Below, piece after piece: positions 1,523-45,530 of a stretch of DNA of 64,000 bases; positions within the stretch are counted from its first letter, which is position 1, and every line of letters begins with the position of its first letter. The notes beneath the pieces were generated by a model, which was given only the letters and a program-made list of their open reading frames with translations, ran no database searches and was not told the origin of the DNA. The position numbers were made by a program, and so were the translations under genes. The stretch covers positions 1,240,001-1,304,000 of the forward strand of contig NW_027271168.1 in assembly GCF_040938485.1 (NCBI RefSeq). Direction: 5' to 3'. This DNA is from Diadema antillarum. Lineage: Eukaryota.

Positions 1523-4500
1523 CTAATCATCACAACAGTCACAGTCACAGTCACAGTCACAGTCCCAGTCCTATAAAACAAAGAAGAGAATAACACATTA
1601 TATACAAATGTATAGATAGAGAGAGAGAGGGGGGGGGGCAAAGAGATATTTATATGTACTTGTCCCATTAAAAAAAAAGAATAAAGAGCGAGAGGAGATT
1701 AATGCGCATCTGTGGACCTTAAAATGGATTAAATTGCCTTGATGCAACTTTTATGAGCAGCCCCTTGATCGATACCATTAACTTCATCACGTATGACTAC
1801 ATTACAGTACACACCTTAATCATAAAGGCCTCACAAACAATTCATATCAGTTTCTACCTATGATGGTATCCACCCATCACATGATTTCTACGTGGAAGAG
1901 ATAAGACAATTTCTACTTAAGGTCCCGTCTACAAAAAAGAAATGGTAAATCCAACATTGTACATGCTGTTACTCCTTTTGTATATGTTAAATTGATATTC
2001 AAAATACTGGATTTACCATTTAATTTTTATTCATTTTTAGACTGGTCCGTCAATCAAACCATGCAAGCTTTTTCTTTAAACATGAAAATGTTTGTTGTCG
2101 CCCTTTGCCTCACTCAAAATACAAATATCAGTCTCTGATATGCATTGTCCAGACAGATTTGGTAAAGAAAATAGATGACGCATCAGAATGAATAGATTAA
2201 AAAATGAGGGAAATTAAACCCATCTGTTTTTGTTTGTTTGTTTGTTTATTTTAATTTTAGAAAATCCACACCCCCAACCCCGGCAGCAATCTGGTTTAAA
2301 CAACGTCAGGTATTGACTAACATATTGTAGACGAAAGGGCACTAGGGAGAGAGAGAGAGGGGGGGGGGGGGAGAGGAGAAGGATAGTGATAGAGAGAGGG
2401 GTAAATATATCAAAATGAATTGAGTTCGTCACGTAAGCCCCAATTTATGTTGACGATATGCTGTCTCATTTATTGAAGCGTTAAATATGCAAATTCCCTC
2501 ATATTTATCGTGTGCACAGGCAAAATCAATGAAAACTGAAGAGTGATTGTGACAAGAGCCAACTGATATAACATATACACAAAATCAAAGATAAGTACAG
2601 GACTTGAAAGTGAAAATGCATATCCGTCAGTGGTTTTGCTTCTCTATATTTTCCGTGTGTTTAAAGGTGTTGTCACTTGCTGTTGTTTCATCTGGCTGTA
2701 AGAATGGAAAGCCACATGTCTCTTGGTGGGTTTTTATACATAATACACAGGCTTTGACGCTCGAGTTAAAATTATATTACGCTGAATATTTGCCTGATGC
2801 AAATATGAATCGCTTATTTCCTCATGTTTCACAAAGTTAATAATCAACCCCAGCTCAAATGGTGTGCGATTTTTTTTCTTTTTTTTTTTAGTCTGTTTAC
2901 GTTGCGCGCCACCATATTTGTATGGTGCCTGCCGTATTATATTGTACTATAAATAACCATGATGCATTTGAGTATCATGACGTCACCCGAGGATTTTTTT
3001 TCCCCGCCACATTTCAATAATAATTTGACAAATAATGAACAGTAATTATACATATCACGTATACTTGAAGTAGAAAGAGAAAAGAAACGATAACCTCGCG
3101 AAAATTAAAAGCTGCATTTCAGTGTGATTAATGAATATTTGCTATCAAAAATATCTCTCATATAAACTACTGAACCATATTTTGAAAAATTTAAGGTACC
3201 CCGACTTTTCACCTTAACCCAGATGATGTTTACGTCCCTTCTAAGTCAACCCAATCCTTTCGATATGGACAGGTTCTTGTTTTAACACTGGTTGAAGGAA
3301 CAGATTCAAGGAAGTTTGTAGAGAAGGATGGAGAATAATATAAGATAGTTTCGCAGCCCGAACTACGAGGAAGTTCAGCATGTTCAGAGGAGAAGGATGT
3401 GAAGGTAGCGACTTTATTCATTATTTATACGAGACATTACAAGAGGGACAAAAGAAGTATATACACAAAGCTCGAACATAAAATTATTCTGCAGTTTTCT
3501 AAGATGTCATTGAGGAAATGATGGGTGGGGAAGAGTCCAGAAGATGTTCGCTTGTGAAAAGTAGTATCAACCACAGACATCATCTGTTGAATCTGAAATT
3601 AATACAGATTCTGTGAAGGCCTCACACGATTTTCCCTGGGTTACGGATTAATAGGAGAGAGCTCGGAAAGAAATATCCATGTCATGATTAACCATTTGCC
3701 TGCGAGATTTGTAGATATCTACAGGATTTGGACAGGCCTTTCAAGGTTTCCAAGGGCAACTAACTGAGCAATGTTGTGTGTAATCATACCGTCCCCTCTG
3801 TAGTCAGTGGACAAACACTCTGTCCCTCGGATGGGACATAAGATGAAGGTCCCGTGTGTGAGAGGATCACAACTAAAAGATCCCGCTTCATTTATTCATG
3901 GTATAGAACAGGATGTTAAACCCAGTGCAGTGGTCCCACCTCACACCCAACTGGACCCATGGAAGACCAGCATAGTTCAGCTGAATGATAATATGGGCTA
4001 TCCAGCCCTCTTCTCAGATGGAAAATGAAACAACGAACAAACAAGGGAGATTATTAGCCATGGCACCTGGAGTACTCGGAAGAAAGAAGCCTTCTTACCC
4101 CACAGCATCCATCGCCGTCGTCATCATCGTCACCACCAAAGCAAAAACTTAGAAGGCAACACACGTTACAATCGTCAGCATTATTGTTGTTACTGCACGG
4201 CCCAATCGAGAAAGATGTGTCAGTAGGCAGCAGGGGAGGGAGAGAGTGGGAAAGAACAAGACATAGATTTTAACTCATGCATTTTTAATCCATGACATTT
4301 TCATATTTGACAGTCCTACCTTCGGCATTTTAACTTCTAACATTTTTTTTTCTCTCTCTCGCATTTGTACCTTAAACATTATGCTACCTCTAGCATTATT
4401 TTTCGTTATGGATATTAACTTACCTCTTTGCAGTTATATCATTGATATCTTATCCCCGACATTCGCATCTAATGCATCCTTATCTGTGATATTTCTAACA

Positions 4501-5924
4501 TTTGACATATTTTATCTCTGCATTTTTATTCCTCTGACACTATTACCTTAATTGCCATTTTTATTTTGGGAATTTGTTCACCTCCGATTCACTTTTCCAT
4601 GACAGTTTTACATTTTAGAGCAATTATGGGGTGTATGATTGGGAGCACGTTTGCGTGTCGTCCTAGTCTTCTTTAAGGAGAAAAGATTCTAGCTTTGTTT
4701 ATATCAGAGACTCGAACTGCTCTTTGTTTCATATATAGTACTATTCAAAGATACTTCTATTCTTTTGTGTGCTATATTTGATATTATATACCTCATAATA
4801 TCCTCTCATCTGATTGGTTAAAAGTGGAGTCATGAAAATAGCTGTGCCCCATTTTCGATCAAAATGACATCATGATTTACTGTGCCCGGGGCATAGAATC
4901 AACTGCGCCCTGTAAATAGGTTTGGATACAGTCGCAACCCCGTACACATAGATCACTCATAAATGTACGCACCAATGATACAACCGCCGCGCTGTCAATC
5001 AGCGTTGATTACGAGTGCTGTAAAAGAGACTAGAATCTATATTTTCGGTATCTATATTTCGGAATCTATATTTTCGGTATATAAAACAAATAATGACAGC
5101 TTGATATTCGGGGCACAGTTAAAATTATGTAGGCCCTTGGTGATGTGAAAACCATAACTATGCCCTCAGCTTCGCTTCGGGCATAGTTATGGTTTTCACA
5201 TCACCTTGGGCCCATAATTTTAACTGTGCCCCTCATAGCAGTCATTATTTGTATACTATTTAAAGGAACTTTTCTTCTCCAGTTTGCACGCTTAAAGTCT
5301 AATGGATTAAAAATTACAATGTACTTTGTACTCATCTTATGTATTTTACGCTACCAATGATATATGTGTGTACACGCATGTGCAATAAAAAAACACGAAC
5401 CAATCAAATCAAATCAAATCAAAATCAAGATGCTATTTCTGAACGTGAACACGAAGTGGAGTTTCTCTCTAAGATTCTGTAAGTGCCACCGCGGTACCTT
5501 GTTCCAGCGTGATAGTGGGAACCTGCTCCATATGCAAAGGCGTCTACGACGTCATCTACCCTCTCCTCCCGTTTCTCCTCCTCCTTTCGCCGTCTCTCTT
5601 CCTCCTTGCGCCGCCACTCCTCCGCACTCTCGACGGTTACATGGTAGGCCGAGTTTCCGGGCGTGGGCTGGGCAGTAATGGCCATCGGGGGCTGACCAGT
5701 AGTCGGTCCTGCTACGGGCACCATGGCGATCTACACACAAAAAAAAACACACCATTTTTTCAAGTGTCAAAACCTTTCTCTTTTGTTTTCTCTCTTCTCT
5801 CTCTGGTGTTTATATCATATCCCATTCATATATGCATTATACTTTGCATAGATGTAAAATATTGTATAGGCCTATATATTAAGTATATCATACATATTAA
5901 ATATATTATATACAGGCCTTTATG

Positions 5925-5961
<37 letters not shown>

Positions 5962-6099
5962 TCTCTAAAAAAATCGAGTGAAAATATTCACTCTTTAAGG
6001 AGTGAATACAAAAGAGAGTGAATTTAGAGTATTCACTCTTTTTTGTATTCACTCCTTCAAGAGTAAATATTTTCACTCGATTTTTTTAAGAGAGTATAC

Positions 6100-6132
<33 letters not shown>

Positions 6133-6343
6133 ATGTATGATTTGATTTCAATTGATATCAAGGCAATACGTATATTATGGTGTGTGTGTTTTCTTTGTGT
6201 GTGTTTTCTTTGTGTGTGTTTGTGTATTGTGTATTCGTATTACGAATATCACCCCTGAAACAAAAATCTGATGGTATAGAACTACATTACGACAACAAGT
6301 ATACCAGTGGGAAATGGAGACAAAAAACAACAACATGAACAAT

Positions 6344-6374
<31 letters not shown>

Positions 6375-6551
6375 GAAAACGAAATTGAGGGATCCTATTT
6401 CTTGCTACAGAAAACACAGGAACACGCGCATTATATAGGGTATCTAGGCAGACAGGGGCACAGTTCCTACCTGCTCCACGCCAATAGCTGGGTTCTCTGG
6501 ATACGGCAGCTGGCCGGTGCTCTGTGAGGGCTGTGAGCCATAAGCGGCCAT
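1523..6551 (-). CDS. Gene A: small Cys/Asp-tail protein of an unrecognised family, 4 exons, 151 aa
   Basis: Exons 6551-6471 (MAAYGSQPSQSTGQLPYPENPAIGVEQ|gtagga), 5730-5498 (IAMVPVAGPTTGQPP...EEWRRKEEERRRKEEEKREE...HYHAGT-AG|gtaccg), 4192-4099 (NNNNADDCNVCCLLSFCFGGDDDDDGDGCCG|gtaaga), 1570-1523 (DWDCDCDCDCDCCDD*). Total 456 nt, phases 0/2/0, same as the two paralogues. Confidence 0.8.
3764..4045 (+). mobile_element. 5'-truncated copy of the same SINE (intron 3 of gene A; partial counterpart at 12597-12738)
   Basis: ctgagcaatgttgtgtgtaatcataccgtcccctct...cccaactggaccc.tggaagaccagc...cagatggaaaatga matches the 43.5 kb copy. Confidence 0.8.
5085..5255. mobile_element. Foldback MITE-like hairpin
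   Basis: caaataatgac...cacagttaaaattatg...gtgatgtgaaaaccataactatgccc / cttcgcttc / gggcatagttatggttttcacatcac...cataattttaactgtg...gtcattatttg. Confidence 0.7.
5959..6097. mobile_element. Short palindromic MITE (TACTCTCT...AGAGAGTA family)
   Basis: Self-complementary cactc/gagtg-rich element, an internally deleted relative of 19723-20016, inserted in a (TA)n tract. Confidence 0.75.
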
Positions 6552-9722: not shown

Positions 9723-9753
<31 letters not shown>

Positions 9754-10002: not shown

Positions 10003-10054
<52 letters not shown>

Positions 10055-10195
10055 CATATATATAGTGAAAACTTTGAGCAAAGAAAATGGGTTTTCATCG
10101 GGATGAAAACCCATTTTCTTTTCTCAAAGTTTTCACTATTTATTATTTGTTTCTGGTCAGTTTTCCTTCTCTTTGTTTCAAAATATATAATCATA

Positions 10196-10241
<46 letters not shown>

Positions 10242-10859
10242 CAACATGTTATATCTAGCATGATATATTTAAGATATAGCCTCTTCAGAATTCTCACTGT
10301 TCAGCAAGAGGGACATGAATACGTAAAAAATCTCACTCTTGTCGAAGAACGTCAGGCTCTGCACCTATAGTGTGTTCGATGATATCCCCATCAATATACT
10401 GTTCTTGTCAGTATTACTCATTTGTTCGGTTGCCATCTAAAACTGATACCTAACTGACAATCTGGATCATTCAAAGCCTCACTCAAAACTCACATTTTCA
10501 CCATGGCATTCAACTGCTAACTCCCTGGGAGGAGTCTGCGCCTTTGAATGTTTTTACAGCAGATATACGGCACTATACAAATGCTGTGGATCATCATCAT
10601 TATCTACAGTCTCATTGGTTGATCAATAGTGGTTCACAGACTGGCGCGCTTTCCGACCTAATCCAACATCCGTGAGCACGTGCCATGGAGTATTTGGGCA
10701 GAATCAGTGTGGATGGGATGAAACTTTGAGATAGCCCAAGTTGTGTCCGTGTGTCCACCTCTGTAGCATGTTTTTCTTTTTCTGACTGCTGGTTGCCGGT
10801 GGAACGTCCTGCATGTCGTAAGATAGAAAGTTCTGTTTTCAACACGCTCCCATTGACTG

Positions 10860-29900: not shown

Positions 29901-32900
29901 ACAAGACGAACAGCTTGGATGGTAGAGGTTTTATCACATTCAAATAGAATTGCTTTACTTGGGCCTCTTCCTCTTCTCTCTTTTGAATCGGAGTGCCAAT
30001 CCGTTTACTCAGATATGTATATTTAGTTATGCATTTTTCCCATTATTTAAAGATTTCCACTACAAATAAAAAGTATCATTTTCAATTTGTCCCTTTTTAC
30101 TCAGGAACTTACCAGTTGTGAAAGCATTGGTCTTCTTTTAGTCTGTGAATTCCGTCCATATTCCTTAAAGTCTTGTGCTATTATTTCACAAAATTCCACG
30201 CCTGTCAAAATATTTGTATGTTATGTGTATATTATACATACATGTATATGTACAGGTGTATGTTCGTAAATTTGTTCATATTATGATTATGTGGTTGTTT
30301 AGTATTTATTTTATGTAAGTAATTTATTCTTACTTTATTGCATTTTCCCGATATGCCATTTCACCTGCTTGTTCAAATTATGATTGTTTCTTTGTAATGT
30401 CATTTTGCATGATTTGGATATGGAAAACTATATGTGAAAATAAAAGATGAATTTAAGATGAGATATTTCTTGAGTTTCCCTGATTTCAGAAATCAGTGAT
30501 AGCAGTTCCAACCACATATTCAAATTGACAGCGGTGATGATGTCATCACCCAACAAAGTCTTCAACATATAATACATAAAGCAATGTGATTAAAAAGTAG
30601 GCCTTTCTCCTGCGCATCAAATTGTTGGTAATTAGGAAACAATGATACCTGTTGTGTTTTTCGGGTGTGAAGGAAGAGGTTGAAACTGCTATTACATCGA
30701 GCAAATAAATGCTTTAATCAGTAACCATTGCGTATTAGTGATGTGTGATTACACTACAAAGCAATGTTGGCGTGGTTAGATAAGCACCACTTCTAAAAGC
30801 AGTGATCTCCGATTAAGAAAAAAAAAAGTCAAACAAATTTAGACAAATCCTCTCCAATGCAGATATCTGGTTAATGACAGCTTTTCATATTTTTGTTAAG
30901 TTATAATTTCGCAGACAGTAAAAAGAACATTCATAATTGGCTCAGAGATCGCACTATTTACAAATTATTTGCAATGATAAATCATTTGTGAATGATGTTC
31001 GTTGTACATATTTAACTTCCCCTTAATATGGTCCATGGGCTGTGCTAACATAATAGATTGGTGATGAGGCGGACAAAACTACATACATGCCGTGCTAACT
31101 TTTTTTTTTACAATGCCCGGCCGTGGTACAAGAACGCGTATACATACGCCTGTGGATGTTAAATGTTGACATTATTGGTTCATTATTGCAGTCCTATACC
31201 AATCACTAATCTGTGTCCAATGAATACTCTGGGGAAATTTGCAGTAGAAATAATATTCGTCGTGTTATTATCAGAATAGCACCTCTGAGTTTAATTGCTG
31301 GCCCTGCTCTATAAGCCATCAAAGAAATTTACAGAAATAAATGTTCCTTTGAGAGAGAGAGAAACAGAAAGTTTAATCTATTGGAATAAAGTGCCTGTTT
31401 AAAAATCCTCTACAAACTTGTAAATATTCAGAGGTGACCATAACAATCAACTATCTTTTATCTGAACAACATAAATATGCTCTCATGAAAGCTATTTTTA
31501 TGCCTCCGTCACGAAGTGGTGCCGGAGGCATTATGTTTTCGGGTTGTCCGTCCGTCCGTCCTTCCGTCCGTCCGTCCTTCCGTCCGTCTGTAATGAATTT
31601 TGTGGACAGGATAACTATCAAAACCTTTTGAGGTATCCTAATGAAACTTGGCATATAATATGTGTATTAGGGGGTGAAGTTGTGCTTATCAACTTTTGGG
31701 TGCACATGCTCAAGGTCAAAGGCCAAAAGGTCAAGGTCAAATACATAAAATTTCACTATTTCCACCATATCTATGCAATGCTGAAGATATTTTCTTGAAA
31801 CTTAATGTATACATGTATTACCCAATTAAGATTCTCTGGTGAAAGTTTGGGTCATGAGGTCAAAGGTCAAAGGTCAAAAGGTCAAGTAAAAATATTAAAA
31901 CTTCACCTTTTTTTTCTGTACCTTGGAAATTGTTCAAGGTATCTTCATGGAACATAGTATATATACATGTACTGACTGGCAGTGATTATCTAGAGAATTT
32001 AGGGTTCATGGGGTCAAAGGTTAGGGGTCAAAGGTCAAGGGCAACACTTCAAAATTTTACTATTTCCGTCATGTTTATGCAATGCCAGCAGGAATTTTTT
32101 TTTTTTACACTTGGTGTATGCATGTATAACCTAATAGAGATTCTCTGGAAAGTTTTTTTTTTCTTTTGTTTTTGCCTCAAAGGCCAAAAGGTCAAAGATC
32201 AAGTGAAAGTGCTGAACTAGGTTTTTCCTCCATATCTCGGAAGTGGCTCAAGTTATCTTCAAACGTACTACATATTTATGCATGTCCTGCCTGACAGTGA
32301 TTATCTTGTGAATTTTAGGGTCAAAGGCCAGATGAAAATGGTAACAATTTACTATTCAATACAGAAATTGCACTTTTTCTCAATACCTTGAAAATTACTC
32401 AATGCATAAACATATGAATGGGTCAAAGTCAAGTTAAAGTCCTTAAATCCCAAATACATGCTCTCCTATTCATCCAATTAAACCTAGGTCAAGGAAGGTG
32501 AACATTCAACACATTTGTGACAAACTTGTCATTTTGATATTTTGCCAATTTTGTGAAAATGTAATCACACATTGTCCACATGTACTATGGATAGACCTAT
32601 TGGGAGAATCATGCATTATGGCGGAGGCATACCAGTCGCCATAGCGACATTTCTAGTTCTATTATTAACATTATAAAACACTAACAATGATTAGTAAAAT
32701 TGATTATGAAAATATACTCTCAACTGTACCCCCGTCCCAACCCCCAACCCCACCGTCCCCATCTCTCTCCCTTCCTCGTTCAGGTATCTGTCGACCCGAT
32801 GCCACCGGCGGAATACCCAGAGAGTTCGCCCCTAACGACAGCGGTGACGGCTCAGCCCATGCCAACCGCGCCCATGGAAACGAACGGTACTGGCGTCGAA

Positions 32901-35900
32901 TCGGAAGAGGAGAAACAGCGAAGACGGGGTTACTATGACAACGCTCCCGTGTACACGCAACCTGTTGCTCATCCTAGGTATAATATGAACACGAGTATAC
33001 AAAAACTGTCGCATAAGTACTGGCCACATATAGCCAGTATGATGGCCTAGCGCTGCTGTTCACATTTATGTACTGCAGGAAAAATACCGAATAAAGTCGT
33101 GAAAGTTTGGATCCTGCGACACATGCGCTACGTTAAATTTCATTTACCTTTATGCGTTGACAAAAAAAAAAAGGTGGTTGGAAATACTCATGGAAGTGCA
33201 ATTGATTAATCAAAGTTTGGAACTGAGATAATCATCGCAATGTTGACGATGTAATTTGTAATGATTACTATCATCAACATTACTATCGTTGTTCTTATTC
33301 ATTATTAAGGTTTTTGCTTTCATTGCCATCATCATCATCATAATTGATGATCTTATGTGGTGATGAACGTTAGGATTTCAGACAATTAACAATTTAGTAT
33401 CAAAATTTCTTCACTCTTGTAGAAACGGAGTTCAACGACTGTCATCCAGCAGGCAGTGTGAATGCGATGTCTTTTATATCCATTCGATTTGATCGTCATA
33501 GTCACAATGATTGGTATTATGATTTCATTATCAAGGAATCAATTACTAGTGGCTCTATGTATTGTGGAGTACTGTATTTACTGTAATCTATATCACATGA
33601 CGAGCAACTTATACCATGGGCAGCGGCGTAAATCCGTACTGAGGAGTGGGGGGGGGGGGGGGGGATGGTCACCATCACCACGATTACAAGCCCATAACCG
33701 GACCGGCGCAGCCTTGGGGGGTGGGGGGAGAAGCTTGGTGCCCCCCCCCCCCCCACACGCACACTTTACAGGGATCGGATGTCCCACTCTTTTGCATGAA
33801 ATATAAAGTGGGAGGAAAGTGGCAGCAAAAATATGAAGACTTTTTGTTCTTGTTGTTGCTTTTTTTTTTGCTTGTCAGATGACTTGCGGCGGAAAATCAG
33901 ACCTTAAAAGTATGAAGACATTTTTTGTTTTTGAAATATCTGTGAGAGAGAGCGGAGCGACCGGGTTAACGGGGGGAGGGTGTGTATGGGGGGGGGGGGG
34001 GTGTCCCTCTCCCACACGAGGAAGATTTTGCATTTTCAGACCTGAAATTCAGCGATCTGGTGCACATTTTTGGTGAAATTTTTGTTTGTTTTTTCTTTAA
34101 AAAAACAATAGAAAATGAAATATTCACAATATATTATTGAATGACTAAATCGTGGTATTTCAGCTCTTGCTCCGCCTGTGCGACATCACTGCGAAAGCCT
34201 ACTAAATAGTGGGGCCTATCACTGGCGTAGACAGGATTGGGGGAGCGGTTATGAGATCGTGAGGGAGTGAAGCAAGCGAGGGGGGGGGGGGAGGGTATGG
34301 TATGGGGGTTTCTTCCTCCCACGTTGAAATCTTTTTACATTGAAAATTTTGACATTTTACAGTCCAAAAACTGCCGTTTGTAGCTTTCTTCGCTTTGGAA
34401 ATTAAGGGGGGCGCACACCGTGCGCAACTGCTGTCAATCACTGGCAGCAACATCAGGAGAATGGCATAGCGATTAAATGCGAGCGAGCGGAGCGAGCGAG
34501 CTTGAAAATTTTGTCATAATGCTTTTACATGCTAAAAACTGCCGTTTGTAGCTATACTTCTTCGCTTTGGAAATCAAGGGGGGCCGCACCGGGCGCAACT
34601 GTTGTCAATCACTGGCAGCAACATCAGGAGAATGGTATAGCGATTAAATGCGAGCGAGCGAAGCGAGTGAGCTTGAAAATTTTGACATTTTACAGTCCAA
34701 AAACTGCCGTTTGTGGCTGTATTTTTTTGCTTTGGAAATTAAGGGGGGCGCACCGGGTGCAACTGTTGGCAATTACTGGCAGCAACATCAGGAGAATGGC
34801 ATAACAATTAAATGCGAGCGAGTGAAGCGAGCGAGCTTGAAAATTTTGACATTTTACAGTCCCCAACTGCCGCTTTTGGCTGAATTTTTTTGCTTTGGAA
34901 ATTAAGGGGGGCGCACGGGCGCAACTACTGGCAGTTACTGGCAGCAACATCAGGGGAATGGCATAACGATTGAATACGAGCGAGCGAAGCGAGTGAGCTT
35001 GAAAATTTTGACTTTTTACAGTCCCAAAACTGTCGTTTGTAGCTATATTTTTCGCTTTGAAAATTAAGGGGGTGGGGGCGCACCGGGCACAACTGCTGGC
35101 AATTACTGGCAGCATGCAACATCAGGAGAATGGCATAACGATTAAATGAAAGCGAGCGAGTTTGAAATTTTGACATTTTACAGTCCCCAAACTGTCGTTT
35201 GTGGCTGTATTTTTTCGCTTTGGAAATCAAGGGGGGGGGGGGGGCGACACACCGGGCGCAACTGTCGGCAATTACTAGCAGTAACATCAGGAGAATGGCA
35301 TAACGATTAAATGCGAGCGAGCGAAGCGAGTGAGCTTGAAAATTTTGATATTTTACAGTCCCAAAAAACTGTCTTTTGTGGCTGTATTTTTTTCGCTTTG
35401 GAAATTAAGGGGGGGCGCACCGGGCGAAAATTGCTGGCAGTTACTGGTAGCAACATCAGGAGAATGGCATAATGATTAAATGCGAGCGAGCGAAGCGAGC
35501 GAGCTTCAAATTTTTGACATTTTACAGTCCCAAAACTGCCGTTTGTAGCTATATTTTTCGCTTTGGAAATTAAGGGGCCGGGGCGCACCGGCGCAACTGC
35601 AGCCATTCACTGGCTGCAGCATCAGGAGAATGGCATAGCGATTAAATGCGAGCGAGCGGAGCGAGCGAGCTTTAAAATTTTGACATTTTACACTCCTAAC
35701 ACTGCCGATTGTAGCTATATTTTTCGCTTTTGTTTGTCCCACTTTTATGGGGGAACCATCCCCCCCCCCCCCATTGACGCCTCTGCATATGAGGGTGCTT
35801 TTGTTAAGTGAAAGATCTGCTGCACACTCTTTGATAAATTAGGGAAATATACGTCAATCTCAAAAGTGTACAAAGTCTATCGAAAGGGATCCTGTTATAC

Positions 35901-37235
35901 AGCGGAGCTTTTGCATGTTTATGATTGCAATACAACGATCTGGTGCATCTGGCGATATTTGGACAATTTTCCATTAAGAAAGTTCGAGATTTGTCCTCAT
36001 CTCGGGAATTGCTTTGGGGATAAATGATTTGTCTGCCTTAACACTTCCGTAGGGGCGGGGCAAATGCCCCTTTGCCCCCCCCCCCCCCCCCCCCCCCGAG
36101 ATAGATTCGACGCCCCTGATCTTCCTTGGGTATGCTCATAGATGTATCCTGACTGAGTCACCAGTCACTGTCGTTTCTCAGGAATGATTCAGGAAATTGC
36201 GGGGGTTCAATTATGGCGATATAGTTTTTGTTATTGTTTGTTTGTTTGTTCGTTTGTTTGTTTGTTTTCGTACATATCTTGCAGATGGTCCCCAGTTACT
36301 CGCGTCATAGCATGTTTACATATAGGCCTATACTATTTGACGTTGTCAACGTCTGAGCCATACCTTACAGTGTATGTCGATGTTACTTTCTTCGTGAGCG
36401 AGCGAAGCAAGCGAGCGCTTGAGAAAATTATGACATTTTCCTACAAGATAGAATACTGTTCAGCTCTGTTACCTGTCTGAAGGCCGGCGTACAAACGTCA
36501 TGCAATATGCCAAAATTGATACAATCACATTTCTGCTTCCTCCATTTTTTTCTCAAAATTCAGGGGTTGATGATTGTACAGGCCATCCCCCCCCCCTCCT
36601 CCATTTCAGGGGGGATATATCCCCCCCCCCCCATCCCCCCCCCCCCGGGATTTACGCCCATGCCACCATGGGTAATCAACCATGGCTCGCAATGAATCAA
36701 TCAGATGTCTGCGCAACGTACCCATTAATTTTGATTTTGTCACACGTACTCTCCTACTTGGTTTCATAGCACCACAGTGCGCTCAGATGATTGTTGCGCG
36801 TCATGCTACTGCACAGGAAACGAGTGCGATGGCGACTGTCTCTCATGCTTACTATGCTGCTGGATTTGGCGTGGAAACTCACACCACCACGGCGGTCACG
36901 TCAACCACGATCACGGCGGGTGCTGCGATGGTGACGGTGATGGCGGTTGCGACTGCGATTGCAAGTGTTGCTCGGTGAGTTTCATCCGTTGGTTGCCCAA
37001 CACGAATTTACACGTATGCTGGCATTACACTGTCTCGAAATTTAAGACGCCCTCACGAATAACCTGATGTTGTTACGATCAGACACGAATTGGAACATTT
37101 TCCTAACGTGTGTCCATCTTTGCTCAACTTCAAGACAGTGTGACGCCTGCTTTCAAGCACGATCCTGGTTCAAGTTCCTGATCATGGCTGCTAATCGTTG
37201 TCGTGCCCATAGGCACACACGCACAAACACCCTCT

Positions 37236-37272
<37 letters not shown>

Positions 37273-37593
37273 TCCACTTTTCTTCTTTGACTATATATCG
37301 ATCATTATTCTTTAGATTTCTGTTCTAATTCATTATCAGTTAGCCGATCTATACAAAATCGCAAATCTACTATTTGTGTACTTTTATATCCGATGAACTA
37401 TACTATGATATCATATCTATAGACCAATCTATCAATTATCTATCTTTCAGTCGATATTTATGTTTCTATCCCATCAACTTCTGTTATCCAGGATGGATGC
37501 GACCATGATTGTGACTGTGATTGTGGTGGATGTGATTGTGATGGATGCGACTGCGACCTTGGAGACTGCGACCTTGGAGGCTGCGATTTTTGA
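21896..37593 (+). CDS. Gene C: divergent paralogue with PPPPY motif and extended Cys/His/Asp-rich C-terminus, 4 exons, 190 aa
   Basis: Exons 21896-21967 (METTQTPTGMDDPPPPPYSVAVEQ|gtaaga), 32784-32977 (VSVDPMPPAEYPESSPLTTAVTAQP...VAHP-AG|gtataa), 36770-36974 (TTVRSDDCCASCYCTGNECDGDCLSCLLCCWIWRGNSHHHGGHVNHDHGGCCDGDGDGGCDCDCKCCS|gtgagt), 37492-37593 (DGCDHDCDCDCGGCDCDGCDCDLGDCDLGGCDF*). Total 573 nt. The exon 1-2 join across 10.8 kb is inferred from the homologous VEQ junction in A and B. Confidence 0.78.
24290..26870. repeat. ~265-bp tandem array (7 full units plus degenerate units)
   Basis: The marker aacaagtgggactgtttcaag recurs at ~24367, 24625, 24903, 25175, 25438, 25704, 25969 and ~26490. 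Confidence 0.92.
26219..26476. mobile_element. MITE nested within a satellite unit
   Basis: TA|TGAAGAGCTCATTTGCAAATGGGGTTAGATCCA...TGGATCTAGCCCCTTTTGCAAATAAACTCCTCA|TA splits the unit motif catcaaaata-tactgag. Confidence 0.7.
27400..27880 (+). mobile_element. 3' fragment of a CR1/L2-group non-LTR retrotransposon (post-RT region, frameshifted)
   Basis: LYNAFIFPHMAYCNIVWG ... LQKK.IRIC ... HTTPLFKQLNVLKIDDIHKFQTSVFMYK is a typical C-terminal ORF2 motif series. Confidence 0.8.
31495..32658 (+). mobile_element. Helentron-associated (DINE-1/HINE-like) non-autonomous element
   Basis: 5' TTTTTATGCCTCCG subterminal IR, (GTCC)n microsatellite, repeated aaggtcaaaggtca cores, then 3' CGGAGGCAT, a hairpin GTCGCCATAGCGAC and CTAGTT. 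Confidence 0.8.
34340..35730. repeat. ~167-bp tandem array, 8 units
   Basis: catcagg.gaatggc recurs at 34451, 34622, 34786, 34948, 35120, 35285, 35454 and 35620; the units carry gcgagcgagcgaagcgagc. Confidence 0.92.
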
Positions 37594-40500
37594 GGATGCT
37601 CCCAACGTACAGCCTGCATGATGAATCCTCTTCGTCAACGTCATGAAAGACGCGCATCAATAGACGAGGTTCCGTGACGTCAAATGACGCTTTGCTTGCG
37701 GAGAAAAGACAAATCACGTGTGTCGTAAGCGCGTAGCTCTAGCGCGCGGGACGCGTACAGTACCCGCCTGCCTATGGGACGTAAGATGTAACGCTTACGC
37801 GATTGCCCACGCGTATAGGGCCCGATAGGCAGTTTTTGTCCCAGGCCCGCAGCATGGCTTGATGACGTCATTGAAACTTCGTCCGTATTTGGGTGTACGT
37901 AAAGACGCCAGTACTTAGTCCTACATTATTCTTTCCCAAAGAGCTTATCATAACGAGCAGAAAAATCTCTTTAATCTTACCTCAGACTGCTCAGAATGAT
38001 GCTACGGAAAATCATGTGCTGCCAGGAATTGTTCCGAGACTCTATGAATGGCAAACCGATGTTCTTGACGTGACAAGAGGACAAAGGAAGTTTAGGAATT
38101 AGTTTATATGCAGGGACCTTAGAACGTTTTGTGTGTGATTTGCGGGGCGGGGAGGGGAAGGGCTCGTGTTTGATTCACTAGTAAAGGGTCAATGCCTCCC
38201 CTCCCCCCCCCCCCCCCCAATCTTGGGAAGGAACCATTTTCGGCATTTTGAAGAGCCAAAGACTGTTTCTTGCGCGGCCCCGTACTACAGGACAGTCTTG
38301 CGTTCAAAGTGTTCATCGGCAATATTTGTTTTTTCATACATTAATTTTGACTTTCGTTGAACTTTAAATCAGTCAGCATCGCTTGTGCATGAGACAACCC
38401 TCATGAACTTCGAAAGCTTTAACAAATATGTGATACCTCTGGCCGTATGTACGCATGCGATTGTGTTAACGAGTACACTATAGTTTTAGTTCAGACCTAA
38501 CTTCAGGTTTCTAACATCTTTTTGTGTGTGTGTGTGAGATAATGAGAAACCTCTTATGAAATATGAAGTATTGATTTTTTTAAAAATAAACATTGAATAT
38601 TCTTAAATAAACATTGAATTCCAAGAGAAATTAAATATTTATTTGATAAAACTTGCTTTTGAAATGACTGAGACATCCAAAACAGAGCAATCCAAATAAA
38701 AGATCGGACCTACACCTTCTAAAGGGATGACTTTGTTCTACTTTGTTTTTGGATGCCTCAGCCAATACAAAACCGATTTTCATCTAATAAACTTTGAATT
38801 CCTCTCAGAATGATATGCTCTGTATAATTTCATAAGTGGTTTCTTGGTATCTCCAAGGGCTCTAGTTAAAAGCCCAATCCTCATCTCCACCAATACTATA
38901 CCATCCCTGTAGGGTGTCTGTATAATATTTATAAGTGTGTCACTATAGAACGGAGTGTGGTGTGGGTGTGTGTATGTTATTAAAACAGTACTAGGAAGCA
39001 AAGAGGCTTTACCCCCCCCCCCCCGTCACACACACACACACCGCACACATCCTTAGCTACCCACTAAAAAAGTGGAGATACTGTACTGATTACTAAGATG
39101 GAATTGTAATAATCGATATAACAATGGTACCTTATTGACATCATCATACTCAGTATCATTTAAATCTTTATCATCACACTTAAATTTCAGCATTATTATC
39201 ACCATTATCATCATCGACATTATTATCATTATCATCATTATTATGAAAATGACACAGGTGTGAAACTCATGGCAACGTCAGTCATTTCAAGTTCCTATAG
39301 AATCACACCTTACGGCCCAAGATATTCAACTCTAAAATATTTCATGAAATAACGACTTTTTTTTAAAACTCTGAAATGTTAAAATGTTTACGATATGTCT
39401 TTAAATAGGACATAATTAGGCCTACACGAGCGCGTCAAATGCACGGCAGGTATGTTTCACCTATAGCTGTAGTGCCAACGTTAGTCATTGAAATACATAT
39501 AGGACTTGTACATTGCAATACATTATAACTCAGTATGAACCTAACGCAGAGCATGCGTCATGTTGTAAATTCAAAAAAAAAAGTGTAAATACTCTATAGA
39601 AATATACGAATTATTGATTTCCCATAGCAAGAATTATGGTTATACCGCACAAACGTGCTCTGCTACAAAGGTTAGGAAATCGATCACTTGACGCCAAATT
39701 AACAAATTGCAGTCCGTTCCACTGATGTGTGCACCACTTACTAGTATGGTAGTAGGCCTATAACTTAGGCCCTAAAGCGTAGTAATACCAGGTTATTTTG
39801 AAAGGTTAATAGAAATTCTGATTTTCTATATTTTCTATATTAGCTTTGTGAGCTTGTGTACCCCATACGGCAATCCATTCTTGCAAGTGAAATCTTGTTA
39901 TCTGTAGCAGGCTACACGGTCTATGATTTATCAAATGCATGTACATGTATAAGAAATGCATAATCATTCTGTCCCGTCGAGGCTTACAACTTTGAAGACG
40001 AATAACGTTTCCGGTGATTATGTATTTGGCGTGCATACAAATTTAACATAAATTAATGGATGCATACTTCCACGAAGATGATGTTAAATTTCCAGAATAA
40101 TTCCTGTATGATACAAAATTCGTAGGCATACCTGTATGTAATACGTTGTATCATGCAACTACTTTATACCCGTTTGCATACTGGAGTATGGTATTAGCGT
40201 GCGTGTGGGAGAGGAAGGTAGTATGTTCGTCAAAACAGGAACGTGGTAATGTGTTCGACGGGGTTTGTGTGTGTGTGGGGGGGGGGGACGTACATGTTTA
40301 TAAAACGAACGCGGGATTGTGTTTGACGGTGTGTGTGTGTGTGTGTGCGACAGATAGGGGTAGAAAATAAGGACAGACAATATTTTGATTAGATTCTATT
40401 CTTTAGAACTGATCTTTATTTCATGACGTATATAAATCTATTTTCAAATGATTGATTATTGTACTCGAAATTTCAGTTGCCTGGTTTACACATTCGATTG

Positions 40501-41233
40501 AATGCTTACTACATTGTAAATGCAATAATAATTATGTATTAAATGAAATCAAATGAAAATTACTGAAATGAAATGTTTAATTCGTTTCATTTTTGTTAAC
40601 AATCTTCCAAAAAGTTAAAATAACAAGCACTTCCAAATCCTAAAGCACATTTCGCGCGTATACTAAAAAAGGATCACGAGTTTTGCCGATTCATCTATTG
40701 GTGCTGGTAAGAGCGTGGTATTCAACAGTGTTGTATTGTGGAAATTGATTGTGCAATGGCACTGTTGCTTTGAATTAAGAGTTTTTAATGTCATTTATAA
40801 TAATGATAGTACTTTAAAAAATAACAATGATGATGACGATAATGACGACAGTGATGACGACGAGGATGATAATGATGATGGCAATGACGATGATAATCAA
40901 GATGATCCTGATGATGATGTAAATGTTGAACAAGCACGTAATCATCAAAGGCAACCCCCTCTGTTAAGACAGCTCTGCAAAAATCGGTCTGAGTAGGTCG
41001 ATACGGTGGAAGGCAGTTCTCGATGTCTTCGCAGGACCATGTTCTAACCTGGGGTTCTATACTCCGCCTGTCTGATCTATTTGTAGCATTATCAAAGTTA
41101 TTTCCTTTTTCATCTAACCTGAAATCGAAACATGATATCTAACCGCAAGATGGGTTGGCGAATTCCGTATTTCATTTACGTGGCTCGACCAAAGGCAATC
41201 GTTGACCGATTGTTAGCCACTTCAGGGTGGTAA

Positions 41234-41448
41234 TACAGTGGACTCCCTTTATAACGAAGTGCTCGGGACCGGTATAGGGTTTTTGTTTGGTTTGTGTTTT
41301 TTTTTTTTTCGTTATATCAAAATTTCGTTACAACCGAACAAATAAACAATTAACAACATAGAGATGATAATGTTGGAGCCTAAATTCTTACCTCCCAGTA
41401 ACTGGAATTTCGTTATAACCATGCTCGTTATAAGGGGAGTGCACTGTA
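41234..41448. mobile_element. Tc1/mariner (pogo-like) MITE, second copy
   Basis: TA|CAGTGGACTCCCTTTATAA...TTATAAGGGGAGTGCACTG|TA. Confidence 0.75.
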
Positions 41449-42981
41449 CAGAAATTCGCCCGTTGTATGTCGAGTGTAACATATAGGTTGAAAGACAGAC
41501 TCCTTCCACTTCACTTTACATCACGTAATGCTCTTTGCGAATCAATTTTGCGAAGTGAGATCTTTTTATGTGTGTGAGTCTTGACTCCAACACGCTGAGC
41601 TCTCATTACTATAGCTCGATATCCAAGGGGCGAAGAGGTTTGTATTCTGCACTGTTCTGACGGAGAGGAGATGACACAAGATCACAGAGTTGGCTCAGCT
41701 GGTCTCACTGGGTCTTGAACCTTTGACCTGTAGGATTGTCAGGCAGAGACAAGCTACTGACGGAGCCAGCTCGCCGCCCAGTAGGCGGATATTGCTTAAT
41801 TTAAGGCCTGAAATAGCTCAATGGATTGGTTTACCAAGTATGCTTATACTTCTAATACTTCTATGTTCATCCCTATAAGAGNNNNNNNNNNNNNNNNNNN
41901 NNNNNNNNNNNNNNNNNNNNNNNNNNNNNNNNNNNNNNNNNNNNNNNNNNNNNNNNNNNNNNNNNNNNNNNNNNNNNNNNNNNNNNNNNNNNNNNNNNNN
42001 NNNNNNNNNNNNNNNNNNNNNNNNNNNNNNNNNNNNTCTCAATTCCAAATACTTGTACTGGTATCATTAACTTGTTGAATACAAAGTACATTTGTATCTA
42101 CATTGTAGGGATAACTGAATACTACAAGTGTATGTCCTCAGAAGAATAAAAAATCCATACACTTGAATACAGGTACTCACATAATTTTAAACTTAACAAA
42201 CTTAACTTTTATCAATACACTTAAGAACATCAGTGAGACCATTAAAGGCAATACAATTCAATGCCTCCGAAAAATTAAAAGCCACATGTACATTAATTCG
42301 CTAATTGCCATTGACATAGAGAAACACAAACAAACAGCACAATGTCAAATATCAGTATGGTTTCTTGTTTGTTTATACAATGTATTTGTTTTAATAATTG
42401 AAAACAGGCATTTACACAGTAAATAACCTACATGACTGATACAGAAGGCCTACATACATACCAATGTCATTGGTGCTATGAAACGGCATGAGGGGCACGA
42501 ACAACTCCAAACATTATATTAGAAATATCTTGAAATATAACAAAGAATGACAATAATGGCATATAGAAAAGAATTTGTTATTGCATAGGGTATTTCATCA
42601 TTTTAAACACATCAAACGAAAAGTGCGGTATCATTGTATTCGTCACATTGACGGTCTGCTTAGAAATTAGGTAGCACCATTTCCAATGGAAGCATTCAAC
42701 ACTTAGTTTGTGCATGTAGTTTCAATCTACATAATGATGCTAATTGATAGCACACATCTATTACTCTATTATCTGGTTTTTCAGATTGCAGCTATTATGT
42801 GCACTCCACAATGTCCAATGATGAGGTGAAATAATAAATGAATACATACAATGTATATTTCCATGACTGAGTACACATCCCGGATCATAGATTACTATAC
42901 CCGCAGGGGATTCACAAGGGTGTCGTCATCACTGACAAACCACTCATAGGCCAACTGTTCAATGTTATAATTTTCCGCATA

Positions 42982-43284
42982 CAGAGACTCCAACTCTCCC
43001 ATTTTCGACGGGAGATCTCCCGCCGAAAACCCATTTTTGCAAAATCTCCCGTTCTCCCGCTGGAGATTTGATTTCTCCCGCCCTGGCTCTGCGTCTCCTG
43101 GTGGAAAGGATTTCTTACTTATTGCTATCGTATGTTGAAAAAATAAGCCTTAGATAGCACCAGAGAACATCTAGAACCCTAGGAACTTCGCGCTTCGCAC
43201 ACATCAACTTGGAGTCTCCCATTTGCTAGGGGTTTCGGGCTGGAGAATCTCCAGATAAGAAGGTGCTTGGGGTTGGAGTCTCTG
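42982..43284. mobile_element. MITE with CAGAGACTCCAAC termini
   Basis: cagagactccaac ... gttggagtctctg; no clear TSD. Confidence 0.6.
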
Positions 43285-43461
43285 TGCATATTTTATCCAT
43301 TTTGAAACCTTTCCCACCCACTCATCCCATCCCCCCCCCCCCCCTCCCCAGGAAAAAAAGAATCAAAAAGGAATCTTAGAATAATTTGCTTATTGTCTCA
43401 GTTATTATGACCTTAGCTGGCTTTACTTCATAATAGCTGTATTTCTGAATCAATCAAGTAT

Positions 43462-43804
43462 GATTGTTTGTTCATTTTCCATCTAGGAAGATGGCTGGAT
43501 AGCCCATATTCAGCTACTTTAAGCTGGTCTTCCATGGGGTCCAGTTGGATGTGAGGTGGGACCACTTCACCGGGTTAAACACCCTGCTCTTTGCGATGAA
43601 TGAATGAAGCGGGATCTTTTTCATGCATGAGCTGTGACTCTCTCATACACGGGATCTCCATTTTATGTCCTATCCGATGGACAGAGTGTTTTGCCTCTTG
43701 CTAGAGGGGACGGTATGATTACACACAACATTGCTCAGTCCAGACTCGGGTTCGAACCCGGGCCGCGTGATCGTGAGGCAGACGCGCTACCGACTGAGCC
43801 AACT
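43462..43804 (-). mobile_element. tRNA-derived SINE, near full length
   Basis: The minus strand starts with a tRNA-like head: A box TGGCTCAGTCGG and B box GGTTCGAACCC. The body is shared with copies at 3764-4045 and 12597-12738 and ends in an (AAAC)-like tail. Confidence 0.8.
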
Positions 43805-45363
43805 AATCGTCCTATTACTTTCTACAATGGGACCTTGACTTTATTTCCTCTTTCTTTTTTTTTTAAGGAAAGTTGAAGTGTCGGATATGGCCAAAATATC
43901 ACCTAATGGAACAAAATAGGAGAAACGCCTTTCAGTATGCACAGCGTATGACTGACTTATGCGTTGTATTGACACATCAGTATACAATTTTACTTAATAG
44001 AGATAATACGACAATGTACCTCAGTTTGTAGCAGGGACGTATTAAGAAATGCGACCTCAATGTACAGATAGAATAGACTGTATGCCATTTTGTAGAAAAA
44101 TTCAATGAAATTCTGCGAGTAGCATATGCCCTGTGGAAGACAATACTGTACATACAACTAGTGTTGGTAGCGTATGGCAGGTGGCCGAGCAGAAGCCAGC
44201 TCCATACATGGGAGTTTACTGGTACAGAAAAGTTAAATACTGCAGTGTGACTTCAATATCATCACCTTGAAACTGAATATCATTTGCTTCAAAATGTCAT
44301 GAAATGTGATTCAGATAAAAACAAATGCTTAAATCAATGTTTATTTTTTTTTCTCATAATAACTCATATCAGATAGAGAAACAAGCGAGGGCACATCACT
44401 ACATTTTTTAATTTCTGAGGGGAGTTTGGAAAACTTGATCAGAAATGGCAAAATTATGTATTTTTGCATTCAGTGCTAATTTGCTTTAATAATTTCAGAG
44501 ACTTACAAAACAATATTTACACATTGGTAATCTATTTAGAGTGTAAACACTATTTATAACCACCCTAGGGGCTTGCTCACAGAAAAACAACACTTTAACC
44601 ACTACAAAAACACATTCAAACACAAGATCAGGAAGATCTCACAATTATTTCTTGCCAAATCTTTTGATGGCATTATCTTATTTGATATAATGATAAATAC
44701 AAATTCAATTTGCTTTTCTTTATCCTTCATTGTGGAATTTCATTTTCAGGGTTATATCATGTATATATTCACTTGTGTAGTGGCACTAGAAGCAAAAGAT
44801 TGGCAAGTTGCAGCTTACGAATTTGTAAATATGAACCATACTCATTAATATTATAATATTAAACATTTTGCACATTAGTTGATTGCCCTTAATTGTTGGC
44901 CAACTGCCACAATTTGACAGCAACATTAAAAGATTCAAAATCTATTTCATATGGCATGTCAAGGTATTCAAGTACTGCTGCAAAGTAAACATTATGTTAC
45001 ATTGATATGATATATTTAACTTATCAAAATATAAGTCATATTCAAATGCCACTGAGACAAATTTTAAAGTAGATATTAGTTTGGCTGATCAGCTCTTGAG
45101 AGAAGATAAACTCTTCCAAGCAAGGTCTGTATATGAAAAATTTTGTACAAATAAGTGACATAAATCATTTACTTATAGAATATGATGCCCAGTGAGTTTC
45201 AAAAGTAGTACATTCATTCACACACACACACACAAAAAGAGAAAAAAAATCACAAATTCTACTTCCTAAAACAAGCAATGAATGCATAACCTTAACCCGC
45301 ATCGATATAAAAAGTGCGAGAGATTGTTCCTTTCCCAAAATGCAGTGCCTCATTGTGGGTAGC

Positions 45364-45530
45364 ATATAGTGAAAGAAATTAGACTCGAGGCGGACGTTGC
45401 TCTTGATCTTGCTCTCCCTATTAATCTAGCTTTGGCCTGATGGCCTGACGACAGGCCGAAAGCTCAGTTAAAAGGGAGAACAAGATCGAGAGCAACGTCC
45501 GCCTCATGCCTAATTTCTTTCACTATATAG
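45364..45530. mobile_element. Foldback hairpin element (~165 bp)
   Basis: tatagtgaaagaaattag..gaggcggacgttgctct.gatcttg ... caagatc.agagcaacgtccgcctc..ctaatttctttcactata. Confidence 0.75.

What the first reader, a model, noticed from the sequence alone, without database searches (positions are those of the whole stretch)
36770..37593. Gene C C-terminus: 26 Cys, 7 His and 22 Asp in ~100 aa, with a HHHGGHVNHDHGG insert
Seen by manual translation of exons 3-4: CC, CxC and CxxC motifs flank a short hydrophobic CLSCLLCCWIW stretch, followed by a His/Gly loop and a CDCDC-rich acidic tail partly built from a 15-nt duplication (gactgcgaccttgga x2). Inference: Cys density is metallothionein-like but Asp replaces Lys and His is added, suggesting mixed soft- and borderline-metal ligation (Zn/Cu/Ni/Cd) or an acidic biomineral-associated domain.
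Basis: partly seen in the sequence, partly recalled or inferred. Interest (0 to 1): 0.72.

Follow-up and report, generated by a model that had tools for sequence, protein, structure and literature searches.

The report
Sea-urchin Cys/Asp/His-rich protein tail
The stretch is the real, selectively conserved end of an annotated but uncharacterised gene known so far only from Diadema sea urchins. Its short cysteine patch has grown into a long cysteine/aspartate/histidine tail that probably binds metal ions, though neither expression nor metal binding could be tested here.

Summary
Window 36770-36974 and 37492-37593 (+) are the last two coding exons of a four-exon gene of Diadema antillarum, annotated as "uncharacterized protein" XP_071493115.1 (190 aa). 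These exons encode 102 residues with 26 Cys, 22 Asp and 7 His. They include the CLSCLLCCWIW core, the His/Gly loop and the 15-nt tandem duplication.

The reading frame is under purifying selection against D. setosum: tail dN/dS is 0.11, coding indels are all multiples of 3, and every splice site is GT-AG.

No family could be assigned. Pfam, NCBIfam and PDB sequence searches gave nothing. A HMMER scan of 1.84 billion representative proteins found no real relative outside Diadema. There is no signal peptide and no membrane-spanning helix.

The window holds two paralogues on the minus strand with the same intron phases. They end in a short Cys patch plus an acidic tail. Gene C is therefore an expanded version, and the His loop is an insert specific to it.

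The architecture most resembles CYSTM/CYSPD proteins, which are palmitoylated on a C-terminal Cys patch. Membership of CYSTM, metallothionein or LITAF was not shown. My best reading is a cytosolic, lipid-anchored protein with a metal-chelating tail; this is inferred. No RNA run was listed.

The parts
21896..21967 (+). Gene C coding exon 1 (residues 1-24). It carries a PPxY motif at residues 15-18 and ends ...VEQ|gt.
   Evidence: The other D. antillarum copy and D. setosum start 2 codons earlier (MIMETT); the window copy has GTG in place of that ATG.
32784..32977 (+). Gene C coding exon 2 (residues 25-88 plus 2 bases of codon 89). It is Pro-rich, has PTAP at residues 51-54 and an EEEKQRRR linker, and its donor is in phase 2.
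36770..36974 (+). Gene C coding exon 3 (residues 89-157): N-terminal Cys cluster, hydrophobic Cys patch, His/Gly loop and the start of the acidic Cys tail.
36837..36869 (+). Hydrophobic Cys patch CLSCLLCCWIW (residues 112-122), the segment that aligns with the C-terminal Cys patch of paralogues A and B.
   Evidence: It is the Kyte-Doolittle maximum of the protein (11-residue window 2.1). The 19-residue maximum is only 0.72, so no membrane-spanning helix is predicted. Paralogue alignment.
36882..36920 (+). His/Gly loop HHHGGHVNHDHGG (residues 127-139), an insert specific to gene C.
   Evidence: In D. setosum N125H and H128D change position but the number of His stays the same.
36921..36974 (+). 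First part of the acidic (Cys-Asp/Gly) tail (residues 140-157). It contains the in-frame 12-nt indel relative to D. setosum.
37492..37593 (+). Gene C coding exon 4 (residues 158-190 plus the stop): a (Cys-Asp)n tail built from two 15-nt tandem duplications (37516-37547 and 37549-37586).
   Evidence: All 3 differences from D. setosum are synonymous.
12812..17233 (-). Paralogue B (annotated gene, 130-aa product). Exons are 17233-17150, 14223-13997 and 12893-12812. It ends in a Cys patch CDVCCLFSFCC followed by GDDDDN and the stop.
   Evidence: The unique sensible splice model comes; the alignment.
1523..6551 (-). Paralogue A (my model, 151 aa; I could not check whether it is annotated). Exons are 6551-6471, 5730-5498, 4192-4099 and 1570-1523. 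A Cys patch CNVCCLLSFC is followed by an acidic stretch, then a last exon DWDCDCDCDCDCCDD encoded by a (GACTGT)5 microsatellite.

Best explanation
SHOWN: the two exons are the 3' coding end of a real gene present in both Diadema species examined (D. antillarum, D. setosum). It is one of three clustered paralogues. Each encodes a small, disordered protein without a signal peptide: a Pro-rich N-terminus, a charged Glu/Arg linker, then a short hydrophobic Cys patch followed by acidic residues. In gene C the part around and after the patch has been enlarged. An extra Cys cluster lies in front of it, a His/Gly loop has been inserted, and short tandem duplications have built a (Cys-Asp)n tail. This 51-residue tail carries 17 Cys, 17 Asp and a net charge of -16.

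INFERRED: the protein stays in the cytosol. The Cys patch is S-palmitoylated and holds the protein on the cytosolic face of a membrane, as shown for yeast CYSTM/CYSPD proteins. The PPxY and PTAP motifs, which only gene C has, could recruit Nedd4-type ligases or ESCRT. The reduced thiolates, carboxylates and imidazoles of the added tail would chelate divalent or soft metal ions (Zn, Cd, Cu, possibly Ni or Co). On this reading the protein is a membrane-tethered, acidic, metallothionein-like buffer or detoxifier.
For: Real coding gene:
- A unique GT-AG model reproduces XP_071493115.1.
- The D. setosum orthologue is 95% identical. In the tail there are 8.5 synonymous and 4.5 non-synonymous changes (dN/dS 0.11, P about 8e-4 for the excess of synonymous changes).
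- Exons are 96% identical against about 86-92% for well-aligned intron flanks. Coding indels are 3 and 12 nt, while only 6 of 32 flank indels are multiples of 3.
- Intron lengths differ widely between the species (3792 vs 732 bp; 517 vs 1499 bp) while the exons are kept.
- Exons 2-4 are identical in the second D. antillarum copy, whose surrounding DNA is 97-99% identical.

Family and expansion: paralogues A and B share the exon 1 ending VEQ|gt, the phase-2 donor of exon 2 and the phase-0 junction after CCG/CCS. Their C-terminal Cys patch aligns with the gene C patch.

Cytosolic, not membrane-spanning: the N-terminus is polar and the 19-residue hydropathy maximum is 0.72.

Analogy: CYSTM proteins are small, with a Pro/Gln-rich N-terminus and a C-terminal Cys patch followed by an acidic residue, and some confer metal tolerance (PMC2804304). 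In yeast the patch is palmitoylated rather than membrane-spanning, and one member carries a PPXY motif and interacts with Rsp5 (PMC10840359).

Ligand chemistry (Cys, His and Asp as donors) rests on established coordination chemistry, not on a test made here.
Against: - There is no expression evidence; no RNA run was listed.
- No profile match to CYSTM, any metallothionein family or LITAF, and no PDB sequence match.
- The AlphaFold2 model is uninformative (pLDDT 41).
- No cluster of metal-response-element cores lies near coding exon 1, although the true promoter is unknown.
- PPxY and PTAP are absent from paralogues A and B and could arise by chance in a Pro-rich stretch.
- The yeast authors note that palmitoylated cysteines are not available for chelation (PMC10840359).
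- D. setosum is a close relative (dS about 0.13-0.17), so conservation of individual Cys residues has little power on its own.
Confidence: 0.4

Rival explanations
1. A soluble cytosolic metal-binding protein, an acidic His-containing analogue of metallothionein with no lipid anchor. The hydrophobic Cys patch would simply be part of a metal-thiolate cluster.
For: The tail is 25% Cys with CC, CxC and CxxC motifs plus 7 His and 22 Asp. There is no signal peptide and no membrane-spanning helix. The tail is under constraint.
Against: The one element conserved across all three paralogues is the short hydrophobic Cys patch next to the C-terminus. Paralogue B has almost nothing else that could bind metal. 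Trp, Ile and Leu inside a thiolate cluster are unusual for metallothioneins. No metallothionein profile or PDB match was found.
Confidence: 0.2
2. A lipid-anchored adaptor whose function lies in the N-terminal short motifs and the Cys patch. The (Cys-Asp)n/His extension would be a tolerated low-complexity expansion, or extra acylation sites or a charge spacer, with no specific metal role.
For: The tail is built by microsatellite-like and 15-nt duplications. Its length varies between paralogues (0, about 30 and about 70 residues after the patch) and between species (a 4-codon indel). CYSPD cysteines are palmitoylated in yeast (PMC10840359).
Against: The tail dN/dS of 0.11 is lower than that of the N-terminal half (0.26). 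All three differences in exon 4 are synonymous. Acidic neighbours are a poor context for S-acylation; this last point rests on general knowledge and was not tested.
Confidence: 0.2
3. An annotation artefact: open frames across Cys/Asp-coding repeats that are not translated, or not transcribed at all.
For: No RNA run was listed. All three frames of exon 3 are open. The sequence is low in complexity. No homologue was found outside the genus.
Against: Substitutions show a synonymous excess in exactly this frame. Indels are in frame. GT-AG sites are conserved in two species and two haplotype copies. Intron phases are shared with two paralogues.
Confidence: 0.07
4. A secreted acidic protein of the skeletal matrix (biomineral-associated).
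For: The Asp content is high, and sea urchins build calcite skeletons.
Against: There is no signal peptide and no membrane-spanning helix: the N-terminus is polar and Pro-rich. Unpaired Cys at 25% is untypical of known urchin spicule matrix proteins; this rests on general knowledge.
Confidence: 0.03

Closest known systems
CYSTM / CYSPD proteins (Pfam PF12734; yeast Cpp1-3, plant CDT1 and PCC1, human CYSTM1)
   Same: They are small proteins without a signal peptide, with a Pro-rich disordered N-terminus, a variable charged linker and a short hydrophobic Cys-rich patch near the C-terminus followed by acidic residues. A PPxY motif occurs in some members, and the family has links to metal tolerance (PMC2804304, PMC10840359). 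Paralogue B in this window fits this layout best.
   Different: No profile match was found for any of the three genes. There are at most 2 consecutive Cys, where CYSTM has a 3-4 Cys run. In gene C the patch is followed by Arg and 68 more residues instead of sitting at the extreme C-terminus.
Metallothioneins (including sea-urchin MTA/MTB)
   Same: The Cys share is about 25%, with CC, CxC and CxxC spacing, in a small, probably cytosolic and disordered polypeptide.
   Different: No match to any metallothionein Pfam family or solved structure was found. Asp takes the place of Lys (net charge -16 in the last 51 residues), 7 His are present, and aromatic and aliphatic residues (W, W, Y, F, I, L) occur. 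The tail is attached to a 96-residue Cys-free N-terminal part.
LITAF/SIMPLE-CDIP1 family
   Same: An N-terminal PPxY plus P(S/T)AP pair is followed by a C-terminal region in which Cys motifs flank a hydrophobic membrane-associating stretch. This resemblance is recalled from general knowledge and is a lead only.
   Different: There is no hit to the LITAF-like zinc-ribbon profile. The hydrophobic stretch is 11 residues rather than about 22. The PPxY and PTAP motifs are absent from paralogues A and B.
His-rich metal loops of ZIP/CDF transporters and bacterial Hpn-type Ni/Zn storage proteins
   Same: They share H-H-H-G-G-H type runs mixed with Asp, and in Hpn Cys pairs lie nearby (general knowledge).
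   Different: The resemblance is compositional only; no homology was found, and only 13 residues are involved.

Membership tests
CYSTM/CYSPD | Match to the family profile (Pfam PF12734) | tested here: not met
   hmmscan at E<=10 gave nothing for P0001, for its exons, or for the exons of paralogues A and B.
CYSTM/CYSPD | Cys-rich module at the extreme C-terminus (PMC2804304) | tested here: not met
   In gene C 68 residues follow the patch. The feature is met in paralogue B, where 6 residues follow.
CYSTM/CYSPD | A patch of 5-6 Cys including 3-4 consecutive Cys, followed by an acidic residue | tested here: not met
   The gene C patch CLSCLLCCWIW has 5 Cys but at most 2 in a row and is followed by Arg-Gly. 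Paralogues A and B have CC and are followed by G(G)DDDD.
CYSTM/CYSPD | Small protein with a Pro/Gln-rich non-globular N-terminal part and no signal peptide | tested here: met
   The protein is 190 aa. Residues 1-88 hold 17 Pro, and AlphaFold2 pLDDT is below 50 almost throughout.
CYSTM/CYSPD | S-palmitoylation and membrane association of the Cys patch (PMC10840359) | not testable with these tools
   This needs acyl-biotin exchange or click labelling, plus localisation.
Metallothionein | Sequence relation to a recognised metallothionein family or solved structure | tested here: not met
   Pfam and NCBIfam gave no hit. The PDB gave no hit by sequence or by profile.
Metallothionein | High Cys content in CC/CxC/CxxC motifs | tested here: met
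   There are 26 Cys in 102 residues; positions and spacings are listed.
Metallothionein | Few or no aromatic residues and His (classical definition) | tested here: not met
   The tail has 2 Trp, 1 Tyr, 1 Phe and 7 His.
Metallothionein | Metal-thiolate clusters, stoichiometric metal loading | not testable with these tools
   This needs the recombinant protein and ESI-MS or ICP-MS.
LITAF/SIMPLE-like | LITAF-like zinc-ribbon domain (CxxC ... long hydrophobic stretch ... CxxC) | tested here: not met
   No Pfam hit was found, and the hydrophobic stretch is only 11 residues.
LITAF/SIMPLE-like | N-terminal PPxY and P(S/T)AP motifs | tested here: inconclusive
   PPPY is at residues 15-18 and PTAP at 51-54, both invariant in D. 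setosum. Both are absent from paralogues A and B and are plausible by chance in a Pro-rich stretch.
Secreted skeletal-matrix protein | Signal peptide or other entry into the secretory pathway | tested here: not met
   The N-terminus METTQTPTGMDDPPPPPY has no hydrophobic core. The only hydrophobic peak is residues 112-122. No dedicated signal-peptide predictor was available.

The most novel reading that the evidence does not exclude
A gene family so far seen only in the two Diadema species examined, in which a CYSTM-like palmitoylated C-terminal Cys patch has been extended, step by step across three clustered paralogues, into a long cytosolic (Cys-Asp)n/His tail. The extension would have come from microsatellite and 15-nt duplications and would work as a membrane-tethered acidic metallothionein. 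That would be a new class of metal buffer, caught at three stages of its evolution in one locus.
Probability: 0.25. Interest if true: 0.7.

Novelty: new variant of a known kind. Interest (0 to 1): 0.45.

Why it matters
If the tail binds metals, it would be an animal example of an acidic Cys/Asp/His ligand set, as opposed to the basic Cys/Lys set of metallothioneins, tethered to a membrane. It would be relevant to metal handling in a keystone reef herbivore. The three paralogues, with tails of roughly 0, 30 and 70 residues after the patch, would also show how short tandem duplications build a new domain on an old lipid-anchor module. If the tail does not bind metals, this is one more lineage-restricted low-complexity protein of modest interest. 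Either way the gene is already in the public annotation, as an uncharacterised protein.

Tried and rejected
- RNA evidence: the look-up of sequencing runs listed no run.
- Word-index protein search with the exon 3 ORF found nothing. The exon 2 ORF found only the gene's own cluster.
- Full HMMER scan with P0001 gave three extra hits. One is a 1688-aa repeat protein of a stick insect; the other two (776 aa and 252 aa) carry tail-fibre-like repeats and are of unknown or unchecked origin. They match only residues 47-110 through many repeated weak stretches, and I rejected them as chance.
- Pfam, NCBIfam and PDB searches by sequence and by profile gave nothing.
- The AlphaFold2 model has pLDDT 41, so I made no fold search; it would be meaningless.
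- Metal-response-element cores (TGCRCNC): only 1 lies within 4 kb around coding exon 1, and there is no conserved cluster in the other copy or in D. setosum.
- Synteny: in S. purpuratus, L. variegatus and L. pictus the HHIP-like neighbour is followed by a TMEM179-like gene. There is no trace of genes A, B or C within the 10-kb flanks.
- A (TGT)n run at 6285-6404 (-), which translates to a poly-Cys string, was considered as an exon of gene A and rejected as an intronic microsatellite.
- A literature search for Cys-Asp repeat motifs returned nothing relevant.
- The joined models of genes A and B were used only inside local scripts and were not sent to any database search. Only their single exons were scanned, by reference.
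- The N runs in the window were left as they are.

Full report
**What is there.** The stretch 36770-37593 holds two exons on the + strand. Exon 3 (36770-36974) translates to a Cys-rich segment ending CKCCS before a gtgagt donor. Exon 4 (37492-37593) follows a pyrimidine-rich acceptor and runs to a TGA stop.

A word-index search with the ORF around the upstream exon returned one protein, P0001. This is XP_071493115.1, "uncharacterized protein [Diadema antillarum]", 190 aa. A brute-force search over all GT/AG combinations gave a single model that reproduces it: 21896-21967, 32784-32977, 36770-36974 and 37492-37593.

**Check of the observation.**
- Residues 89-190 contain 26 Cys, 22 Asp, 18 Gly and 7 His.
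- The hydrophobic core CLSCLLCCWIW is residues 112-122.
- The His/Gly loop is residues 127-139.
- The last 51 residues hold 17 Cys and 17 Asp, with a net charge of -16.
- Tandem Repeats Finder confirms the 15-nt duplication at 37549-37586 and finds a second one at 37516-37547.

**Is it coding?** No RNA run was listed, so transcription is untested here. The evidence is comparative.
- The 90% cluster of P0001 holds a D. setosum orthologue (P0002, 189 aa, 95% identical) and a second D. antillarum copy (P0003). I fetched both loci.
- The second D. antillarum copy is 97-99% identical in DNA and has the same HHIP-like neighbour. The public draft assembly is 1.73 Gb with 84% duplicated BUSCOs and 2.5% heterozygosity (bioRxiv 10.64898/2026.05.24.727502). 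D. setosum is 886 Mb (PMC11066563, abstract). The second copy is therefore most simply the other haplotype. Its exons 2-4 are identical to the window's.
- Against D. setosum the tail shows 8.5 synonymous and 4.5 non-synonymous differences: dS 0.17, dN 0.019, dN/dS 0.11. The probability of that many synonymous changes under neutrality is about 8e-4. The N-terminal half has dN/dS 0.26.
- Exons are 96.1% identical, against about 86-92% for the intron flanks that align well.
- The two coding indels are 3 and 12 nt, whereas only 6 of 32 flank indels are multiples of three.
- Intron lengths differ strongly between the species.
- All splice sites are GT-AG in all three sequences.

I take the gene and this reading frame as real, with a probability of about 0.9. 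D. setosum is a close relative, so keeping 25 of 26 Cys says little by itself. The substitution pattern is the real test.

**Relatives.**
- Pfam and NCBIfam give nothing for the whole protein or its exons.
- PDB sequences give nothing for the protein or for a profile of the tail.
- A phmmer scan of 1.84 billion representative proteins returned, besides the query, three repeat proteins that match residues 47-110 by many weak repeated stretches. One is a stick-insect hypothetical protein and two carry tail-fibre-like repeats. I reject all three as chance.
- The proteomes of S. purpuratus, L. variegatus and L. pictus are in that collection, as the HHIP-like hits show. So no annotated camarodont protein is detectably similar to gene C.
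- For synteny I used the 440-aa first-exon ORF of the neighbouring HHIP-like gene to reach its orthologues and fetched their loci. In all three camarodonts a TMEM179-like gene follows 3.5-5.7 kb downstream, and there is no trace of gene C in the 10-kb flanks.

**Paralogues in the window.** A weak tblastn echo and a scan for Cys-dense frames led to two more genes on the minus strand, head-to-head with gene C.
- Gene B is annotated (130-aa product, window 12812-17233). The only sensible three-exon model ends in the patch CDVCCLFSFCC followed by GDDDDN and the stop.
- Gene A is my own model (151 aa; exons 6551-6471, 5730-5498, 4192-4099, 1570-1523). It has the patch CNVCCLLSFC, an acidic run ending CCG, and a last exon DWDCDCDCDCDCCDD encoded by a (GACTGT)5 microsatellite behind a good acceptor.

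All three genes share three features: exon 1 ends VEQ|gt, the donor of exon 2 is in phase 2 (AG|gt), and, in A and C, there is a phase-0 junction after CCG/CCS. In the alignment the gene C core CLSCLLCCWIWRG lines up with the A and B patches, and the His/Gly loop has no counterpart.

The tail in the finding is therefore an enlarged version of a short C-terminal Cys patch plus acidic tail. The His loop really is an insert. D. setosum also has an exon 1 of the A/B type upstream of its gene C.

**Topology.** The N-terminus is polar and Pro-rich, and no stretch reaches membrane-spanning hydropathy: the 19-residue maximum is 0.72 and the 11-residue maximum is 2.1, at the patch. AlphaFold2 gives pLDDT 41, with only a low-confidence helix over residues 113-125. 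The protein is most likely cytosolic and disordered without ligands. That makes a secreted skeletal-matrix role unlikely.

**How it most likely works (inferred).** The family layout is that described for CYSTM proteins: a small Pro-rich head, a charged linker, a short Cys patch and an acidic end (PMC2804304). In yeast the patch is S-palmitoylated rather than membrane-spanning. One member carries PPXY and interacts with Rsp5, and the degradation of another (Cpp1) depends on Rsp5 (PMC10840359).

I therefore read the conserved patch as a lipid anchor on the cytosolic face of a membrane. I read the gene C-specific additions (26 Cys, 7 His, 22 Asp) as a metal-chelating extension. The PPPY (15-18) and PTAP (51-54) motifs occur only in gene C and may be chance.

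Membership of CYSTM is not shown. There is no profile hit, at most two Cys stand in a row, and in gene C the patch is not C-terminal. Metallothionein and LITAF membership fail their sequence tests too.

I found no cluster of metal-response-element cores near coding exon 1, but the promoter is unknown.

**Limits.**
The proteins of genes A and B, which are less repetitive and might reach further, were not searched.
- Their joined models were used only in local scripts and were scanned against Pfam exon by exon.
- Expression, lipidation and metal binding are all untested.

**Verdict.** The gene is real and already annotated as uncharacterised. It has no detectable relatives outside Diadema and belongs to a local three-gene family. 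Metal binding is plausible but unproven, and the biomineral reading is unlikely. Interest is moderate.

Noticed in passing
window 1523-17233 (-): Two paralogues of gene C lie head-to-head with it. Their tails after the Cys patch are about 0 residues (gene B) and about 30 residues (gene A). The last exon of gene A is a perfect (GACTGT)5 microsatellite read as (Asp-Cys)n. I could not check whether gene A is annotated.
   Followed up: partly
window 21880-21900 vs L002 9985-10005 and L001 9985-10005: The window copy has GTG where the other D. antillarum copy and D. setosum have an upstream ATG (MIMETT... versus METT...). The annotated start therefore differs by 2 codons between the two copies.
   Followed up: partly
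window 24277-26221 and 34340-35730: Large tandem arrays sit inside introns 1 and 2 of gene C: a 267-bp unit x7.3, and a 162/335-bp unit x8.4/4.2. The second carries most of the window's TGCRCNC matches, so it could mislead a motif scan.
   Followed up: no
L003-L005 (S. purpuratus, L. variegatus, L. pictus) vs window 37594-46812: In camarodont urchins a TMEM179-like gene lies 3.5-5.7 kb downstream of the HHIP-like gene on the same strand. In Diadema that side holds the three-gene Cys-patch cluster instead, and no TMEM179-like sequence was detected in the window by tblastx.
   Followed up: partly
L002 1-1982 (-): In the second D. antillarum copy an annotated 498-aa product with Viral_alk_exo/YqaJ domains (probably from a mobile element) lies about 2 kb beyond the gene B-type exon 1. 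I did not check whether the window copy has it.
   Followed up: no
window 6285-6404 (-): A (TGT)n microsatellite in the first intron of gene A translates to a run of 10 Cys. It looks like a cysteine string but has no usable splice frame.
   Followed up: yes
window about 12470-12600 and 16740-17000: Runs of N (assembly gaps or masked stretches) lie just beyond the 3' end of gene B and inside its first intron. They were left untouched.
   Followed up: no
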